The notes: generated by a model from the sequence alone, not told the origin. DNA of 64,000 nt from Mytilus californianus (GCF_021869535.1 NW_026262593.1:46996001-47060000); one strand, 5' to 3'. Counted from the first letter of the stretch, positions 42,290 to 50,000 are shown. Numbers and translations are program-made.

Positions 42290-42730
42290 TAAGTAGAAGC
42301 GTTAGAAGCTTTATGACAAAAAGGGACATAAACAATTTAGCAAAATTCGGATCAGTTCAACTTTACCTCATTGGGTTGGAACCATTATTTCTTAAGTTTG
42401 TAATTTCTTTATTTATCTAGTGGGAGTTTTTGAAATATATGTTAAAAATCATGTCAGGACCGAAGCACTGACTACTGAGCCGATGGTGTACTTTTGGTTG
42501 CTTTATCAGCTGTCACGAAAGAAGATTACAATTTTGCATGAAATATTTCCCAATTGAAGCATACAACAATAGAAAAACAAAATTGTATTACACATTGCAC
42601 AACAACATATTCAATCAAATCTGGTTAGATAAAACTTCAATCATCCTTTAACAAACAAAAAAAATATCAAAAAAGATTATCTAAATCAGTAAATAAGAAA
42701 AGATTTTTATTGGGTTTTTTTATTTAGAGG

Positions 42731-43360
42731 ATGGATGTAGAGGATCGTCGACGTTATTTTATTGTAGGATCAGTATTTTTTGAGATTGTTCTACCACTGT
42801 TCAGAACCAGATTAGAAAATGACTACAGAAGTAAAGGGCAGGGATCTTTACAAGCTTTTCTTAGCACCCAACCAGTAATACACATACTGTTTCATCTACG
42901 ACACAGAAATGCCAGCTGCTGTAAAGACAACCTCAAATGTTTCAATAAATCAAATCTTCCGCTGAATTACTGTCAGTGGGATCTGCTGTACACTGAGAAT
43001 TCAAGTCAACCTGGTCACAACTGTCATTGCAAGTTCATAGCAAACCCAGTACAGCTATGTGAGCTTGATATAACATTAGCAAGTTTAATCTTATTGAACT
43101 GCTGCCATCTACAACCATCTGAAGAAAACGCTGTACGCAAATTACGTCGCTTCAAGAATAATTATCTCAGCCACAACACCGAAGGTCAAATTACCGAAAC
43201 AGAGTATAAGAGCTTATGGACAGATTTGACGAGTTTTGTCCTACAGCTAGATCCAAATAAACAAGATGACCTCATCAGGATAGATAACAGACCTCTTGAT
43301 GAAGGACTGTGTATGAGATACAGTACAGAATTTTTGAACATTCACAAAAAACTGAACGAG
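42731..43360 (+). CDS. HEPN(DZIP3-like)/beta-propeller protein, exon 1: HEPN-like domain
   Basis: ATG at 42731, 210 codons, donor GTAAGC at 43361 (phase 0). MDVEDRRRYFIVGSVFFEIVLPLFR...LDITLASLILLNCC...VRKLRRFKNNYLSHNTEGQITETEYKSLWTDL shows the DIT...RN-x3-H...W layout of DZIP3-type HEPN domains, with K in place of R. Confidence 0.75.
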
Positions 43361-44788
43361 GTAAGCATTTTTCTCTCCGGATTAAAGTTGGAAAAAATTA
43401 ATATTAAAATATTAGTTTTAGCTTTTTACTAAGTGGCTGTATCTTTGACCGGTTCTATATTAGTTTTTATATATTGTTGGGGGTATCCGCCGTCCGTCCG
43501 TCTGTGAATTTCAACGAAACGTTTATATATTCTGTATAACTTATTGTACTTGTGCATCTCCTATGCTCCTTTGTGATCAGAATTTCTTGCGTGTCCTTTA
43601 CCAAAATATGGACTTTTCGTCAACTTTATATTAATGGGGGAACAGCCCCAAGCAATAACTGAGTTATTCTTATCCTCATAAACAGTTGATTAATTTAAAA
43701 AAAAAAAAGTTATTCATGACATTATGCCATTACCTCCTATTTTTTGTTTTAATCAGAATGATGTCTGAAGTTTTCTATACAGAACATGGACTTTGCTCTT
43801 TCATATTATGATCATTACATCCCCATCCACGAGTCCGTCTCTATGACCTGTGTTATTAAACAGGTAGAGGTAGCAGAGGGGTTTATAGAAGTAAGATTTC
43901 CTCACATTATTCTACTCTTTATTTTTTCTTTAGTATGTGTTCATGTATTCCCATAACTAAACATGTTCTTAACCTCTTATAGTTATCCAGTGGGTAATAG
44001 GAGCGGATGTATTAATTTTTTCGCTTTGTTCTCGGTGCCTCTAGTTGTGTATTTGATCCCTGTTAAAACAGTAACAAATTCCTACATCTACAAGCAGAAG
44101 ACAGGATGCAAGTTGAGATATCTCTTTTTCAGGTAATTGATTCCATCTAATAATATATTCTTCAAATGCAGGCAGTCTCCTTTATAACTTATGTCAATTA
44201 TTTTCAGGTTCAATGTATATAATTCAATTATCATGAATTCAAAATGGATATAAGAACTTTTCATTTTGAAGAATGAAGAAAATAAACTCCACATTATACA
44301 AACTATCAGATTCTAATGTCTTTTGGCCACTCAGGATAATATATTCACAAATGTACACCAAAATAATTTTTATTGGTACCCATATCGTTAGCAATGAATA
44401 TCCAACGTAAAGAAAAAATTATTTTCATTTTGATGTTCTAACAAGGCAATTATTGTTGACAGAGTTTGTTAGTTTCCTGGAATATGTCAATTTCTATCAG
44501 TAGGTCATTTGTTTGCTTCTTAGGATACAGATAGCTTTCTTCCTCAGCAATCGAATGAAACCAATAAAAAAGTAGATTCAATCTCTCAGAGAAAGATCAA
44601 GAGTATTCTAGACACTGAGTAATGCATACATAGTAATACAAACTGAAACAACACGTATTAGATAGAAAATAGTCAAATCCATCTAATGTAAACTCTGCCT
44701 GTGGTAGAGATAAAGGATCGAAGGTTTTTTTTATTTGCTTCATGTTGTTTTAGTTGATCTTTAAGATTTTAAAACATACATTTTACAG

Positions 44789-44827
44789 ATGGACACTCGT
44801 ATGCAAGGAATTGATTCCGCTGTGCAG
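44789..44827 (+). CDS. HEPN/beta-propeller protein, exon 2 (linker micro-exon)
   Basis: TTTTACAG|ATGGACACTCGTATGCAAGGAATTGATTCCGCTGTGCAG|GTATGT, 39 nt, phase 0-0, MDTRMQGIDSAVQ. Confidence 0.7.
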
Positions 44828-45944
44828 GTATGTCTATTGTTTTTAATATGCATATTTGAGTACAGTTTTGATCTATTTTATATTTTTCAGTGCAATTGTT
44901 TGTGTGTGAATGTTAACCTTTTTCGAAATATTTGAAGAACTTATAGTTTGTAGGTTTGTGAAAAGCAAATGTGATCCCGAAGATAGGTGAATAAAAATTA
45001 TATTTCAAAACTCTTAGAAAAGAACCCTTAAAAGCATAGTTTACCTGCTACTGCTAAATGAAGAATTAACGGAAGAAATAAATAATACAAAACATGCTTT
45101 CAATCCCTGTAACGTAAAAATTTTACGATGAACGCTAAACGAAATAACGGTAGCTGAAAAGATACGCTAAACGATATGATGACAGCTAAGCAAAACGATG
45201 TACGCAAAACTATTGTCTTGAGGCATCGTTTATCGTATGCTTTAAAATAAATATACTTTTGTTCGTACATGGTTCGTTTATTATCCGTAAAAAATATGTT
45301 TGGACAACGTTTCGTTTGCGTTCTTACATCGTTCGTACATAATTAAGGCATTATTTGTTTTGTGAACTCTTACTGTCATATTCTTTGTATGCTTGTCTTA
45401 AGTTAGCAGCATGTAATTCAGTTATTGGAATTTGTTGTTCGTTTATTGTTTTTACGTAAACTAAGCTTTTGGTTTCTCGTTAAATTGTTCCATATTTTGT
45501 CATTTAGTGGACTTTTAAAACTTACTATGGTGTGGGTTTTGCTTATTGTTAACGTTAGTAGCGACAGTAGTTCACCGATGTTCAAATCTCGTAAATCGAT
45601 TAGGAAGAGTCATATCAAGTAAAAAAACAGTAACAGCGGGAACTGCCTGAACTCCAAAAGGAGCGAAACCGGGTACGTCGACAAGGTTGGTGTTTCTCAC
45701 ATCCATTTCATTTGGTATCTGGCGGATAGTTGTATTATTGGCAATCATATCCCATCTCTTTTTTGTATTTCAAAATCATTTACACGTACTGGCCATGGGA
45801 GATATGTCCAGAAGACTTTTAAATTTCAGGAGTAAAGAAACTATTTGATTCTTTCTGAGAGTATACATAAGAGTACACTTTCTTTAATAACATCAAATAT
45901 CTGAAGTAAACTTTTCCTGATTATTTCAATTGGCTATTTAACAG

Positions 45945-46011
45945 GAGATATTGAGTTACCACAGAAATGAAATCATTTGCCAGTACTGCAAGAAAAAGTT
46001 GATTGAACAAG
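45945..46011 (+). CDS. HEPN/beta-propeller protein, exon 3 (linker with CxxC)
   Basis: TAACAG| EILSYHRNEIICQYCKKKLIEQ G|GTCAGC, phase 0-1, bridging to the phase-1 acceptor at 46256. Confidence 0.6.
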
Positions 46012-46256
46012 GTCAGCCTTTTTACAGTAAATTATAATGACAAACATGCTTCAAAATTTGAATTTACATATTATCATTGTATAAATAAATACATTACTGA
46101 CATGATCATGAATGATCCAAATCATCTCAAAATTTCAACATACTAGTAACTGCTGCATTTACATATAATTATGTTGTAAATTGAATACGAGCATAAAATG
46201 TCGAAAATGTTCCTTATGTGATAAGTAAAGTACAAAGTTTATTTCTTTTTTCATAG

Positions 46257-47035
46257 GCATAGATGAAAGCAATATTAGTCCCTACAAACTTGGGCAGAAT
46301 ATCTTTTATCCTCATCATCAGATTAATCTGAAGTCAGAATTCAGTACATTATTGCCTAGAGCGACATTAGATGTCGTTATGATGGATGACGGTAGACTTG
46401 TGCTTTGTTCGTGCTTCCAGTTCAGACTACTTATCTGTAACACAGATGGATCAGAGATAGCAGCTATACCAGTCGATGCAGATGGAAGTAGTCTTACTGC
46501 TGTCAACAACTCCACAGTGGCAGTTATTGTTAATCAACCGTTCAGTAATCCTAGAATCGAGTTGTATGACATAAACAATAAACACAAAATTGAATCCATA
46601 TCACTATTTGGATTTGAGGATACTTTTGGCATGACAATGATAAATGACAATTTAGTAGTAGGTGCTGATAGGGAACTATTGATAATTGATTATCAGACAG
46701 ACGAGATATTACGGAGAATAGGAACACACTGCCACCCATGGGGAATAAATGTTTCTGGTAACAGAATATTCTTCAGTGAAGAAATGGAAAACAACCTTTA
46801 CTGTTACAGCTTTATCGATGACAAAATACACACATTAACACTACCATCCATCCCATATCCAATGACTACACTACAAGACGGTAGTCTGTATGTTCTTTGT
46901 GAGGATGGATCTGTACAACATGTATCATCCAATGGGAAACAGTTCAAAACTTTGAAAACAAATCAATCCCACGTTTTCAATTATCCTGGCCAGATACGAT
47001 ACAATTCAAAATCAGAAAAAAATGGTCACATATAG
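46257..47035 (+). CDS. HEPN/beta-propeller protein, last exon: NHL/TRIM-tail-like six-bladed beta-propeller
   Basis: Acceptor TTCATAG at 46256, in frame with ORF 46352-47035. Repeated about 40-aa beta-rich units (DDGRLVLC, AVNNSTVAV, GMTMINDNLVV, PWGINVSGNRIFF, PYPMTTLQDGSLYV, PGQIRYNS). Confidence 0.8.
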
Positions 47036-50000
47036 TTATCAGTTTGGAATGAAAATACTTCATGAATTATAAAATATGGAACTTGTAGTGATTTTTTCCT
47101 CCGAAATTCAAAATGGAATCATTCAATATTAGCATAAACAATGTTTTGAATAAGATCATGTCGCCGTACAACCGGACAATACACATCCTCATTAATTTTG
47201 ACACGGTTGTCGAAGCAGAAGTTTGGTCCTATACCCAAGATTTCTAAAAAATAATCTAATATATGCAATAAGTTGGTAAATTATGGATGAATTTTAAACC
47301 ATAATCATGCAACCCAATCAGGATTCTTCTTCACCAAAATTATCCCCCATATACCACCTAATCTGTTCAATCGTGAAAATGGAAGCAATTGTAGAGATGA
47401 AACGCTGTCAATTTAGCGCTTGGAAATCGATAAATTTATTCAAATGGCATTGTTACGACAGATATTTCAAAAGATAAATGTATCTTCTAGATATTAAGCA
47501 TCATTTAATATACTTTTATGCCTTTTGTCAACATAAAATTATTGTCTGATTGACCATTTGTACTTTTTCTATAAAGAGTTTTAATTCTTAATATTAATTC
47601 CGACTATATATCAGTCTGAACAGTGATTTAGTACAGTATACTAATAGTGAATGCACTGGGTATGATTTTGTCTAAATACTTTTGAAACCAGATTAAACCC
47701 GTTTTCGTCGGACAATGGATAAAGACAGTTGTTCTCAATACGTTACGTTGGTTGATATAGTATAACGTTTGGTTTTATAAGGTTTTGTGAACTTCACCCT
47801 TTTTGAATTTATCTTTGAGTTCAGTATTTTTGTTGATAATTGTTTTCATGATTTAAATAAAATGTACATCTTATTTATAGTTTTTGTTATTGCACCATTT
47901 AAAAAAATTAGATTGTAATCATATAGTATAATTAAGAAAGGAATTGTGAGGGCTGTTTCATAAAACCATACATATGGGAAAGAGGGAAAACATTGAACTA
48001 TGAGTTTGTGTTTTTGTAAAGTAAAAGTGAAAGAGACATTCTAAAATTGGCTCTTTAGATGGTAACCTAATTTGTCCCGAAACTGCACGAAGTTAATTTA
48101 GAGACCTGAAACCATTTTTGTACAATAAGCAAAGGAATGGATAAGTTGAACTAATTTCTTTACCATGACTCTCACTGTATAATTTTCTGCCTTGTATGCA
48201 ACATACCATCTAATAAGTTTTAACTATCTTTCCAAGTTTCATCACTCACTGTAAGGGGTCTGATAGTAATAGAGCGAATTTTGTACATATACACAGGGGT
48301 TAATAAGTTTAACTTAGTTTTTTTGACATGACAATGACTGTATAATCCACGTAAGCGAGATACGAACAAGTAGTGGTTTATAATCAAATATCAAATTTCA
48401 TTAATGAACTCCAAGGAGTTTGAAAGTTAGAGAACATAAAATATTTATGACAGACGGACAGACTAGTTGATTACTACATTGATTGCTTGTTGTTTGCTTA
48501 ATGTCATGGGGCAAATGTTTCCTGCATGTACAGGAGGAGAACACATTAACAACAAGTATAGTTGTGAGTTACTGCTCACAAATAATACCTCCGTTTTAAA
48601 AATTTGGCAAACAGAAAGTTGATGAGCAATGGAACTGAAAACGTGTCCAAGGTATAGCATGCTGACAATTAATCCGGCGACACATTTCAGGAAAATCATT
48701 ACAAAATTTTAATCTGCTAACGGATGATATACATGTACTATAAGATCCTATAGGTTAAAATACATAATTATCCTGTGTCCAAGCTTTGATATATCAACAC
48801 TCCATTTTACTTTCTATTCTGGTAATTATTACATCAGCCAATGACATTTGGGCTTCCAGTTTTCTAAAGTGCGTATTAATTCCACAAAGCCAGAGGATCC
48901 AGTAAGTAAAACGACGCCTTTTCAAATCATTGTTTGCAAAGCTTGGACAGATGATATGTATTTAATCAGATTGTACATTTCGTATATTGGAAAGTTGCTA
49001 ACCCGATAAATCCCCTTGCTATTATCAATGATAGTGATTTAACTCATGTTCAAATTGCAGTTATTTGCAAGATGTCTTACAGAAAATAACTTGTTACTCT
49101 GCTATACGACGTAAACCGCCGTGCAATTCACCGTACAATAAACAAATACTGTTTTGACAAATATCCTTTCCAAAAATTATGTTTTAAAGAGAATTTCAGA
49201 CAATATGAAGTCACATTGTCATATGCTTAAAACTCATCTGGATAAATATTGAATAACAGTTAATTCCCAATTTGCGGGGCGATGGAAGACGAACGAACTA
49301 TAACTTTTTATGTAATGGGTGCACAATTTGTTAGAAGAACACAAAATCTTGTCAGTGTTTGGTATTTATCTGCATATAAAATTAAAGTACCATATCTAAG
49401 AAAATCATTTCATACGCGTTTACCTTATTAAATCGATAGAAATCATTATGGTCTAAATGAAAGAAAATCTTGTAGTTGTCTTTTCTATTGGCTTCGTAGG
49501 GGACAATTTCCGGTTGCGATGATTCACATTGTTGATACACATCGGTGGTGGATGTAAGATAAGTTAGGGAAGGACAAGGTGTTTACAAAAAAAAAATTGG
49601 TGATATGGCGGAAAGGGTATTATTTCTGTAGAATGAAGGAGTGAGCAGAGTTATTATAGTGCAGTTTTAAATAGATTTCTACTCAAAATTAACTTTTTGC
49701 ACAGCTTTAGATAAATAAAAATCCGTCGGAAGCAAAATGTAAAATACTTGTGGAAATAATCATTGGAAGACTAAGGCTATCTATGTGTCTTCAAGTTGAC
49801 AGGCACTGGCTGAATCTGGAGTTTTTTTGGTTTATAAATGAAGTTAACTGTTTGGCTCTTTCGATTTCAAAAAAAACAAACGTGTACAATGTACGAGGAT
49901 CATCTGGTTCTGAATGGCGTTTACAGAATAAAAAATAATTGTCTAATAAATAAAAATACAGAAAAACGGGCCAAAAAAAAAAGGGTAGAGTACAATATGG

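What the first reader, a model, noticed from the sequence alone, without database searches (positions are those of the whole stretch)
42731..47072. HEPN (DZIP3-like) nuclease-fold domain fused to a beta-propeller: candidate sensor-effector immune protein
Seen: four phase-consistent exons give about 500 aa: a HEPN-like N-terminus, a helical linker with CxxC, and a six-bladed NHL/TRIM-type propeller, with no RING or B-box. The HEPN carries a Cys/His-rich insertion (HLRH..CC...C...C...HNCHC) and the motif KNNYLSH, where active HEPN RNases have R-x4-6-H. Established: HEPN domains are RNase effectors in RNase L/Ire1, Cas13 and bacterial abortive-infection systems, and NHL propellers bind RNA or proteins. 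Inference: an animal ligand-gated RNase or nucleotide-binding defence protein of a bivalve-expanded, largely uncharacterised family. The R-to-K change may mean altered or lost catalysis.
Basis: partly seen in the sequence, partly recalled or inferred. Interest (0 to 1): 0.7.

Follow-up and report, generated by a model that had tools for sequence, protein, structure and literature searches.

The report
Mussel HEPN–propeller immune-type gene
This is a real, spliced and transcribed California-mussel gene that joins an altered RNA-cutting-type (HEPN) domain to a fast-evolving NHL-like propeller; it is one of about 45-50 mussel-only copies that look like an untested sensor-plus-effector immune family, and the copy in this assembly has a one-base frameshift near its end.

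Summary
The four exons (42731-43360, 44789-44827, 45945-46011, 46257-) are joined exactly as predicted, at GT..AG introns, in a 1591-nt transcript contig.

- **HEPN head.** Exon 1 passes Pfam HEPN_DZIP3 (39 bits, cut-off 27). Its AlphaFold model (pLDDT 91) is closest to Csm6 and other HEPN folds.
- **Propeller.** Exon 4 folds as a propeller whose 16 best structural matches are all TRIM-NHL domains (Z 21-22.5). No NHL sequence signature is detectable.
- **Frameshift.** The assembled copy has an extra T at 47012. It replaces the last 19 residues with 7, and two transcript runs lack it.
- **Family.** The gene belongs to a discrete subfamily of about 45-50 loci, and every named relative is from Mytilus. 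Across 81 members the Arg of Rx4-6H is Lys (KNxYLSHN, 80/81). A second family Arg is Leu, a 14-residue loop is missing, and ten Cys/His are invariant.
- **Evolution.** The HEPN exon is under purifying selection (dN/dS about 0.2). The propeller evolves faster (0.6-1.4), with variation concentrated in the B-C and D-A loops.

The sensor-effector immune reading is plausible but untested, and catalysis is open. The scan has already noted other HEPN fusions in this genome, including a HEPN/NHL-like propeller gene 3.4 Mb away.

The parts
42731..43360 (+). Exon 1 (210 codons): derived DZIP3-type HEPN domain
   Evidence: Pfam PF18738, 39.3 bits against a cut-off of 27. AF2 model pLDDT 91.3. Best structural match Csm6 HEPN, Z 8.7, followed by many other HEPN folds. 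The RefSeq paralog P0176 starts at the same Met.
42881..43030 (+). Cys/His-rich insert (residues 51-100) between HEPN helices 1 and 2; candidate zinc site
   Evidence: H51, H55, H58, C63, C64, C70, H96, C98, C100 and also C124 are present in 80-81 of 81 family members. The insert is absent from canonical HEPN_DZIP3 exons of the same genome. Metal binding is inferred, not shown.
43154..43174 (+). KNNYLSH: the position of the HEPN Rx4-6H motif, with Lys in place of Arg
   Evidence: It aligns with RNxxAH / RNDIYGH of canonical Mytilus HEPN_DZIP3 exons. K142 is kept in 80/81, N143 in 80/81 and H148 in 79/81 members. In the model it lies at the end of helix 129-147 and the start of the next loop, which is where the motif sits in HEPN domains (PMC3710099).
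44789..44827 (+). Exon 2 (13 codons), linker
   Evidence: Joined on both sides in the X1 contig at GT..AG introns.
45945..46011 (+). Exon 3 (22 codons + 1 base), linker with CQYC
   Evidence: Joined on both sides in the X1 contig. It is 86% identical in paralogs L024 and L025. The CxxC is present in only part of the family.
46257..47035 (+). Exon 4 as assembled: NHL-like beta-propeller, stop TAG 47033-47035
   Evidence: AF2 model pLDDT 83.8, with 20 strands forming five complete four-stranded blades at residues 37-231. The top 16 VIA matches are all TRIM-NHL domains, Z 21-22.5. The nearest ESM Atlas clusters are molluscan clusters carrying Pfam NHL. There is no Pfam NHL hit.
47012..47012 (+). 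Extra T in the assembly: a +1 frameshift near the 3' end of the coding sequence
   Evidence: Contigs of X1 (depth 9.7) and X2 (depth 4.1) both lack one base here (table 4).
47013..47072 (+). Transcript-supported C-terminal 19 codons plus stop TAA (47070-47072), out of frame in the assembly
   Evidence: Translates to QKKMVTYSYQFGMKILHEL*. This matches the paralog tails YNxKQ[KR]K[LM]VT...F.E.*.
47073..47276 (+). 3' untranslated region (minimum extent)
   Evidence: The X1 contig runs on without a break to 47276 (table 8).

Best explanation
This is a four-exon, transcribed Mytilus californianus gene for a cytosolic protein of about 516 aa with two modules. The N-terminal module is a strongly derived DZIP3-type HEPN domain. 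It keeps the conserved Asp of helix 2, plus the Asn and His of the active-site motif. The motif Arg is replaced by an invariant Lys, and the domain carries an invariant Cys/His cluster that probably binds zinc. The C-terminal module is an NHL-like propeller, probably six-bladed, whose B-C and D-A loops are hypervariable among paralogs. A short, variable helical linker joins the two modules. The gene is one of about 45-50 loci of a Mytilus subfamily that sits in tandem clusters. The most likely working model is inferred, not shown. The propeller is the recognition module for varied, probably non-RNA, ligands. Ligand binding brings two HEPN heads together, as in other HEPN enzymes that act as dimers. 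The conserved HEPN head is the output, either an RNase with a Lys-Asn-His site or a tight RNA/phosphate binder. That would make the protein an innate-immune sensor-effector. The copy in this assembly has a one-base insertion at 47012 that removes the last strands of the propeller. Intact transcripts exist in other individuals.
For: - **Gene and splicing:**
- **HEPN identity:** Pfam above the cut-off. HEPN folds dominate the structural matches: Csm6 Z 8.7, then 1wwp, AbiF, sacsin HEPN, Cas13, MtlR and HEPN toxins.
- **Motif position and conservation:**. D113 is invariant.
- **Propeller identity:**. It is distantly related to the propellers of Mytilus B-box proteins.
- **Architecture in paralogs:** the HEPN exon lies upstream of the propeller exon in 10 of 17 paralog loci fetched. 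Full-length RefSeq relatives of about 500-600 aa exist.
- **Census:** 46 exon-1-type loci at 50% identity or more and about 50 exon-4-type loci, in the same clusters.
- **Selection contrast:** between the window gene and L024/L025, dS is 0.43-0.52 in both exons, but dN/dS is 0.18-0.20 for the HEPN exon and 0.60-0.70 for the propeller exon. In young pairs, whole-exon-4 dN/dS is 0.9-1.4 against 0.17-0.35 for exon 1.
- **Where the variation sits:** column entropy over 81 members is 2.63 bits in B-C loops and 1.92 in D-A loops, against 0.57 in A-B loops and 0.98 in C-D loops.
- **Precedent:** bivalve expansions of HEPN_DZIP3 with a presumed defence role (PMC3710099, PMC9646362, PMC8195603).
Against: - No activity, ligand, induction or dimer was tested.
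- The motif Arg is required for RNase activity in RNase L and PrrC (PMC3710099). Here it is Lys, and a second family-conserved Arg (the LLRN motif) is Leu.
- HEPN structural Z scores (8.7 and lower) are below the level the tool calls safe for helical bundles. The fold call rests on enrichment of HEPN entries plus the Pfam hit.
- NHL domains lead other propellers by only about 2 Z units, and the sixth blade is inferred from the termini, not modelled.
- dN/dS above 1 was never significant by bootstrap, so relaxed constraint could explain part of the propeller's pace.
- The raw RNA run X21 (6% sampled) had no reads on the exons, so expression is low or conditional.
- The assembled copy is frameshifted.
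Confidence: 0.55

Rival explanations
1. The HEPN head is catalytically dead and serves as an RNA-binding, protein-binding or oligomerisation module. The protein would then be a receptor or adaptor without nuclease output, like the HEPN domains that Anantharaman et al. (2013) predict to be inactive in Swt1 and part of the MtlR family.
For: The catalytic Arg is replaced by Lys in 80/81 members. The LLRN Arg is replaced by Leu, and a 14-residue loop of the canonical family is deleted. The Arg is needed for activity in RNase L and PrrC. In the pearl oyster, 194 of 202 HEPN_DZIP3 proteins keep Rx4-6H, so this subfamily is an outlier.
Against: Lys is a conservative, positively charged replacement. 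Asn, His and the helix-2 Asp stay invariant, and the whole KNxYLSHNT stretch is conserved at 90% or more. That is the pattern of a site under selection rather than a decayed one. HEPN families with variant motifs are thought able to use alternative residues.
Confidence: 0.3
2. The family is not immune at all. It would be a TRIM-NHL-like post-transcriptional regulator in which a HEPN head replaces the RING/B-box/coiled coil and the propeller binds mRNA.
For: The best structural matches of the propeller are the RNA-binding NHL domains of Brat, Mei-P26, Lin41/TRIM71 and TRIM2/3.
Against: Every named relative is from one genus, and there are about 45-50 clustered copies with several pseudogenes. 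The propeller evolves fast, with variation on the predicted binding face. The top-face loops of this protein have net charge -7, and the family ranges from -7 to +4 with a median of -1. That does not fit a shared electropositive RNA-binding face.
Confidence: 0.08
3. This particular locus is a dying or dispensable copy. The frameshift at 47012 is real in the sequenced animal, and the gene is a null allele of a presence/absence-type family member.
For: The assembly carries an extra T that is not in a homopolymer run, and it swaps the last 19 residues for 7. About 9 of 53 exon-1-type loci and several exon-4 loci carry stops. An earlier scan report on a related gene 3.4 Mb away also found a frameshifted allele.
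Against: Two samples express the intact frame. The rest of the reading frame is open and keeps every family-invariant residue. A single-base assembly error cannot be excluded.
Confidence: 0.35

Closest known systems
DZIP3/hRUL138-like HEPN family (Pfam PF18738), with lineage-specific expansions in bivalves and cnidarians (Anantharaman et al. 2013, PMC3710099; Takeuchi et al. 2022, PMC9646362)
   Same: The Pfam model is matched above its cut-off. The four-helix HEPN fold is shared, as are the FDITL-type helix 2 with its conserved Asp and the Asn and His of the motif. The domain sits at the N-terminus of a multidomain protein, and this genome holds at least 637 candidate exons of the family.
   Different: The motif Arg is Lys with x5 spacing, the LLRN Arg is Leu, and a 14-residue loop is deleted. 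An invariant Cys/His cluster is inserted between helices 1 and 2. [quoted passage not shown]
TRIM-NHL proteins (Brat, Mei-P26, Lin41/TRIM71, TRIM2/3, Thin) and the Mytilus B-box + propeller proteins
   Same: These give the best fold matches of the C-terminal domain (Z 21-22.5, rmsd about 3 A, 230-244 residues aligned). The blade pattern resembles the NHL repeat, with a conserved DxxG-type A-B turn. There is weak sequence homology (E about 1e-8 to 1e-5) to the propellers of Mytilus B-box proteins P0051, P0054 and P0060.
   Different: There is no RING, B-box or long coiled coil, and no Pfam NHL hit. The top-face loops are hypervariable and acidic in this copy rather than conserved and basic.
RNase L / Ire1 (repeat or lumenal sensor + kinase-like domain + KEN-type HEPN RNase activated by dimerisation)
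   Same: The logic is the same: a ligand-binding module in one chain with a HEPN output that needs two copies to form a site. This is a resemblance in how it may work, not membership.
   Different: A different HEPN family is involved. There is no kinase or pseudokinase domain, the sensor is a propeller rather than ankyrin repeats, and activation by dimerisation is not shown here.
Crassostrea gigas expansion of HEPN + Ig repeats + DED-TRADD-N + WD40 propeller proteins (Kaur et al. 2021, PMC8195603)
   Same: It is a bivalve lineage-specific expansion with an N-terminal HEPN and a C-terminal beta-propeller in one protein, proposed to be an immune sensor and effector.
   Different: Here there are no Ig, DED or TRADD-N adaptor domains. 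The HEPN is joined to the propeller by only 35-95 residues of linker. The propeller is NHL-like rather than WD40, and every named relative is from Mytilus.

Membership tests
HEPN_DZIP3 (PF18738) | Match to the Pfam model above the gathering score | tested here: met
   39.3 bits, E 7e-10, cut-off 27, covering profile positions 22-140 of 144. Relatives P0001, P0005, P0012, P0013 and P0022 also pass.
HEPN_DZIP3 (PF18738) | Four-helix HEPN fold | tested here: met
   AF2 model pLDDT 91.3. VIA wide search: Csm6 4rgp_B at Z 8.7, rmsd 2.8, 113 residues aligned. Then 1wwp, AbiF 8vz6, sacsin 3o10, HI0074, Cas13, MtlR, 2hsb and HEPN toxins at Z 5-6.7. Foldseek alone found nothing significant.
HEPN_DZIP3 (PF18738) | Rx4-6H motif at the end of helix 3 | tested here: not met
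   The aligned position reads K-N-N-Y-L-S-H (K-x5-H). Lys is present in 80/81 family members, and the Asn and His are retained.
HEPN_DZIP3 (PF18738) | Conserved acidic residue in helix 2 near the motif | tested here: met
   D113 (LDITL, matching FDITL of canonical members) is invariant in 82 sequences. Its proximity to the motif in space was not measured.
HEPN_DZIP3 (PF18738) | Metal-independent RNase activity | not testable with these tools
   Needs a biochemical assay.
NHL repeat propeller (PF01436) / TRIM-NHL | NHL repeat sequence signature | tested here: not met
   No PF01436 hit even at E up to 10; only weak generic propeller families such as DUF5050 and CPSF_A at E about 0.01. A family profile against PDB sequences gave nothing below E 0.19.
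NHL repeat propeller (PF01436) / TRIM-NHL | Six-bladed propeller fold closest to NHL domains | tested here: inconclusive
   The top 16 VIA rows are all NHL domains (Z 21-22.5), but other six- and seven-bladed propellers follow at Z about 20. Five blades are modelled with confidence, and the sixth is inferred from the low-confidence termini of the truncated query. ESM Atlas neighbours carry Pfam NHL in 18-88% of members.
NHL repeat propeller (PF01436) / TRIM-NHL | N-terminal RING / B-box / coiled coil (tripartite motif) | tested here: not met
   No such Pfam hits in any exon. B-boxes occur only in the distant relatives P0051, P0054 and P0060.
RNase L / Ire1-type ligand-gated HEPN RNase | Kinase or pseudokinase domain fused to a KEN-type HEPN | tested here: not met
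   No kinase hit was found. The HEPN belongs to the DZIP3 family and lies at the N-terminus.
RNase L / Ire1-type ligand-gated HEPN RNase | Ligand-induced dimerisation forming a composite active site | not tested
No dimer model or experiment was made.

The most novel reading that the evidence does not exclude
Mytilus has built a repertoire of about 50 ligand-gated RNases. Each would have a hypervariable NHL-like propeller acting as a germline-encoded specificity module. Each would also carry a re-engineered HEPN site (Lys-Asn-His plus a zinc-stabilised insert) that cleaves RNA once the propeller engages a pathogen-derived ligand. This would be an animal counterpart of bacterial abortive-infection HEPN systems, with receptor diversity of the kind seen in NLRs or TRIM5.
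Probability: 0.2. Interest if true: 0.7.

Novelty: new variant of a known kind. Interest (0 to 1): 0.45.

Why it matters
HEPN_DZIP3 domains are among the most expanded predicted effector domains in bivalve genomes, yet none has been tested at the bench. This subfamily is a compact case, with one head, one short linker and one recognition domain, and it has about 50 natural variants. It asks a clear question: does a Lys-for-Arg HEPN site still cut RNA? It would therefore be a practical entry point for testing whether these animal HEPN proteins are RNases and what their variable domains recognise. As a genome-annotation point, the reference copy is frameshifted while an intact allele is expressed.

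Tried and rejected
- **Foldseek on the HEPN model.** Nothing was found at E up to 0.001; the best row was Csm6 at E 2.7. Only the exhaustive VIA search brought out the HEPN folds.
- **Family profile against PDB sequences.** No significant hit.
- **Pfam NHL.** No hit, so NHL membership by sequence is rejected.
- **CxxC in the linker as a family feature.** Rejected: many members lack it, and linker length varies from about 35 to 95 residues.
- **Positive selection.** Whole-exon and loop-class dN/dS exceeded 1 in some young pairs but was never significant by bootstrap. The loop-class figures for L027-L028 disagree with the whole-exon figures, and I do not rely on them.
- **Frameshift placement.** I first placed the frameshift in the A-run at 47016-47022. 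The reads table puts it at the T at 47012, and only that reading reproduces the paralog tail, so I corrected it.
- **Raw RNA run X21.** No reads fell on the exons, so strand, transcript ends and expression level could not be read.
- **Repeat in intron 2.** No tRNA and no inverted repeats were found, so it stays unclassified.
- **Named hits outside Mytilus.** They were only weak matches (E about 1e-4 to 1e-5) to microbial YncE/YVTN-type propellers.


Full report
**What is there.** On the + strand an ATG at 42731 opens a 210-codon exon that ends at a GTAAGC donor (42731-43360). Three further exons follow behind AG acceptors: 44789-44827 (13 codons), 45945-46011 (22 codons plus one base) and 46257 onward. 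All are in consistent phase. The window is C13:46,996,001-47,060,000.

**Transcripts.** One 1591-nt contig of run X1 lies on 42906-43358, 44787-44824, 45942-46009 and 46255-47276, with three GT..AG joints. After the tool's stated cut offsets these are exactly the predicted borders. Run X2 covers the exons in pieces. Run X5, from another organism label, also covers the introns and so looks like DNA. The raw RNA run X21, 6% sampled, had no reads on the exons, so expression is low or conditional. The 5' end of the mRNA was not seen. A pyrimidine tract and an AG lie just before the ATG, so an untranslated first exon upstream is possible.

**A frameshift in the assembled copy.** The contigs of X1 and X2 both lack one base at 47012. 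As assembled, the protein ends ...IRYNSKSEKNGHI with a stop at 47033-47035. Without that T the frame continues QKKMVTYSYQFGMKILHEL to a TAA at 47070-47072. The T is not in a homopolymer run. It may be a real null allele or an assembly error, and I could not tell which.

**The head is a HEPN domain of the DZIP3 type, but a derived one.**
- Pfam HEPN_DZIP3 is matched above its cut-off (39.3 against 27 bits).
- With an alignment of 82 family sequences, AlphaFold2 gives a confident, mostly helical model (pLDDT 91.3, pTM 0.88).
- Foldseek finds nothing significant. The exhaustive VIA search puts the Csm6 HEPN domain first (Z 8.7, rmsd 2.8 A, 113 residues). It then lists 1wwp, AbiF, DrrA/GlnE, sacsin HEPN, HI0074, Cas13, MtlR, 2hsb and HEPN toxins at Z 5-6.7.
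- These Z values are below what the tool regards as safe for helical bundles. The fold call therefore rests on the enrichment of HEPN entries together with the Pfam hit.

Canonical HEPN_DZIP3 exons of the same genome read FDITLMICLLRN ... RIKYYRNxxAH. Aligned to them, this protein differs in four ways:
- It has LDITLASLILLN, so the Asp and Asn are kept but the Arg becomes Leu.
- It lacks a 14-residue PPxxG[FY]DxLP loop.
- It reads LRRFKNNYLSH, so the motif Arg is Lys with x5 spacing.
- It carries a Cys/His-rich insert between helices 1 and 2.

Across 81 family members from five Mytilus species, several positions are present in 79-81 sequences. These are K142, N143, H148, N149, R139 and D113, and also H51, H55, H58, C63, C64, C70, H96, C98, C100 and C124. 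The motif lies at the end of helix 129-147 and the start of the following loop. That is the place described for Rx4-6H in HEPN domains (PMC3710099). The site is therefore changed but clearly under selection. Whether it still cuts RNA is open.

**The tail is an NHL-like propeller.**
- Pfam gives only weak generic propeller hits and no NHL.
- The AF2 model (pLDDT 83.8) has 20 strands forming five complete four-stranded blades at residues 37-231. The termini are of low confidence because the query lacks the true C-terminus. A sixth blade made from the N-terminal strand and the C-terminal strands is inferred.
- Foldseek matches propellers of all kinds at E about 1e-10.
- The VIA second look ranks 16 TRIM-NHL domains first: Mei-P26, Brat, Lin41/TRIM71, Thin, TRIM2, TRIM3 and NHL-2, at Z 21-22.5. 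Other six- and seven-bladed propellers follow at Z about 20.
- The nearest ESM Atlas clusters are molluscan clusters with Pfam NHL in 18-88% of members.
- The exhaustive protein search with exon 4 found only 81 hits at E up to 0.001 among 1.84 billion representatives. I looked up names for 30 of them, and every hit closer than about E 1e-5 that carried a name was from Mytilus.
- The weaker hits are Mytilus B-box + propeller proteins and microbial YncE/YVTN-type propellers.

**Family.** A word search with the full-length relative P0005 gave 157 hits. The 120 listed are all from M. trossulus, M. edulis, M. galloprovincialis, M. coruscus or M. californianus. They are named 'uncharacterized protein' or, by UniProt, 'DZIP3-like HEPN domain-containing protein'. 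The nearest annotated paralog is P0176 (LOC127720479, 518 aa), which is 81% identical in the HEPN exon and 56% in the propeller exon.

In this genome there are 46 exon-1-type loci at 50% identity or more, followed by a sharp gap to 38%. There are about 50 exon-4-type loci, in the same clusters on C13, C79, C99, C105, C165 and C2, and several carry stops. The HEPN exon lies upstream of the propeller exon in 10 of 17 fetched loci. HEPN_DZIP3 as a whole has at least 637 candidate exons here. I did not establish whether RefSeq annotates the window's own gene.

**Evolutionary pattern.**
- Against the closest paralogs (L024, L025), synonymous divergence is the same in both exons (0.43-0.52). dN/dS is 0.18-0.20 in the HEPN exon and 0.60-0.70 in the propeller exon.
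- Among the youngest pairs, whole-exon-4 dN/dS is 0.9-1.4, never significantly above 1, against 0.17-0.35 for exon 1.
- Column entropy over 81 members is 2.63 bits in B-C loops and 1.92 in D-A loops. It is 0.57 in A-B loops, 0.98 in C-D loops and 1.0-1.5 in strands.
- By the usual propeller topology, the B-C and D-A loops form the 'top' face, where WD40 and NHL domains bind ligands. This mapping is an inference from strand order, not from coordinates.
- The top-face loops of this copy have net charge -7. The family ranges from -7 to +4 with a median of -1, which does not fit a shared RNA-binding face.

**Mechanism.** What is shown:
- A two-module protein that is expressed.
- A conserved head and a diversifying tail.
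- A clustered multigene family whose named members all come from one genus.

What is inferred:
- The propeller recognises varied ligands.
- The head is the output.
- Two heads must meet to act, as in other HEPN enzymes.
- The role is in innate immunity.

I put about 0.55 on the sensor-effector immune reading and about 0.35 on real RNase activity of the Lys-type site. The main rival is a non-catalytic HEPN that binds RNA or partners.

**Comparison with what is known.**
- Bivalve expansions of DZIP3-type HEPN domains are known, with fusions to NACHT, Death, TPR, ankyrin and LRR (PMC3710099, PMC9646362).
- An oyster expansion of HEPN + Ig + DED-TRADD-N + WD40 has also been described (PMC8195603).
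- I found no paper on a direct HEPN/NHL-like propeller fusion or on the Lys variant.
- The proteins themselves are in public databases, uncharacterised.
- The scan has already reported many HEPN fusions in this genome. These include a HEPN / middle-domain / NHL-like propeller gene 3.4 Mb upstream, also with a frameshifted allele.

Each exon was searched and folded by reference, and full-length relatives were used through their protein ids. As a result there is no full-length or dimer model of this protein, and no model of the complete propeller with its true C-terminus.

Noticed in passing
window 45406-45906 (intron 2): A high-copy repeat. Summed contig depth reaches about 1,500 in X5 (several thousand at single positions), and reads from the raw RNA run X21 pile up here with loose ends on both sides. 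No tRNA and no inverted repeats were found, so it is unclassified.
   Followed up: partly
window 42400-42566: A second high-copy stretch just upstream of the gene, with depth about 2,100 in X5. It was not examined.
   Followed up: no
L036/L037, L027/L028, L037/L038 (paralog pairs on C99, C79 and C105): In the same gene pairs, synonymous divergence of the HEPN exon is far higher than that of the propeller exon: 1.35 against 0.145, 0.77 against 0.17, and 1.32 against 0.21. The two exons therefore have different histories, which points to exon-level exchange or gene conversion between paralogs.
   Followed up: partly
G000:C13:64236859-64237527 and C13:64263160-64263753 (minus strand): A more distant sister locus, 38% identical in the HEPN exon and 28% in the propeller exon. 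The two exons lie about 26 kb apart. Similar distant HEPN exons occur on C154.
   Followed up: no
window 42992, 43004, 43047, 46582, 46695, 46992: The X1 transcript contig differs from the assembly at these single bases (A>G, A>G, C>G, A>G, A>G, A>G). This is most simply allelic variation between individuals.
   Followed up: no
P0001 (M. edulis CAG2216472.1, 959 aa): A gene model with one HEPN_DZIP3 head and three stretches matching the propeller. It is either a tandem-propeller variant or two neighbouring genes fused by annotation.
   Followed up: no
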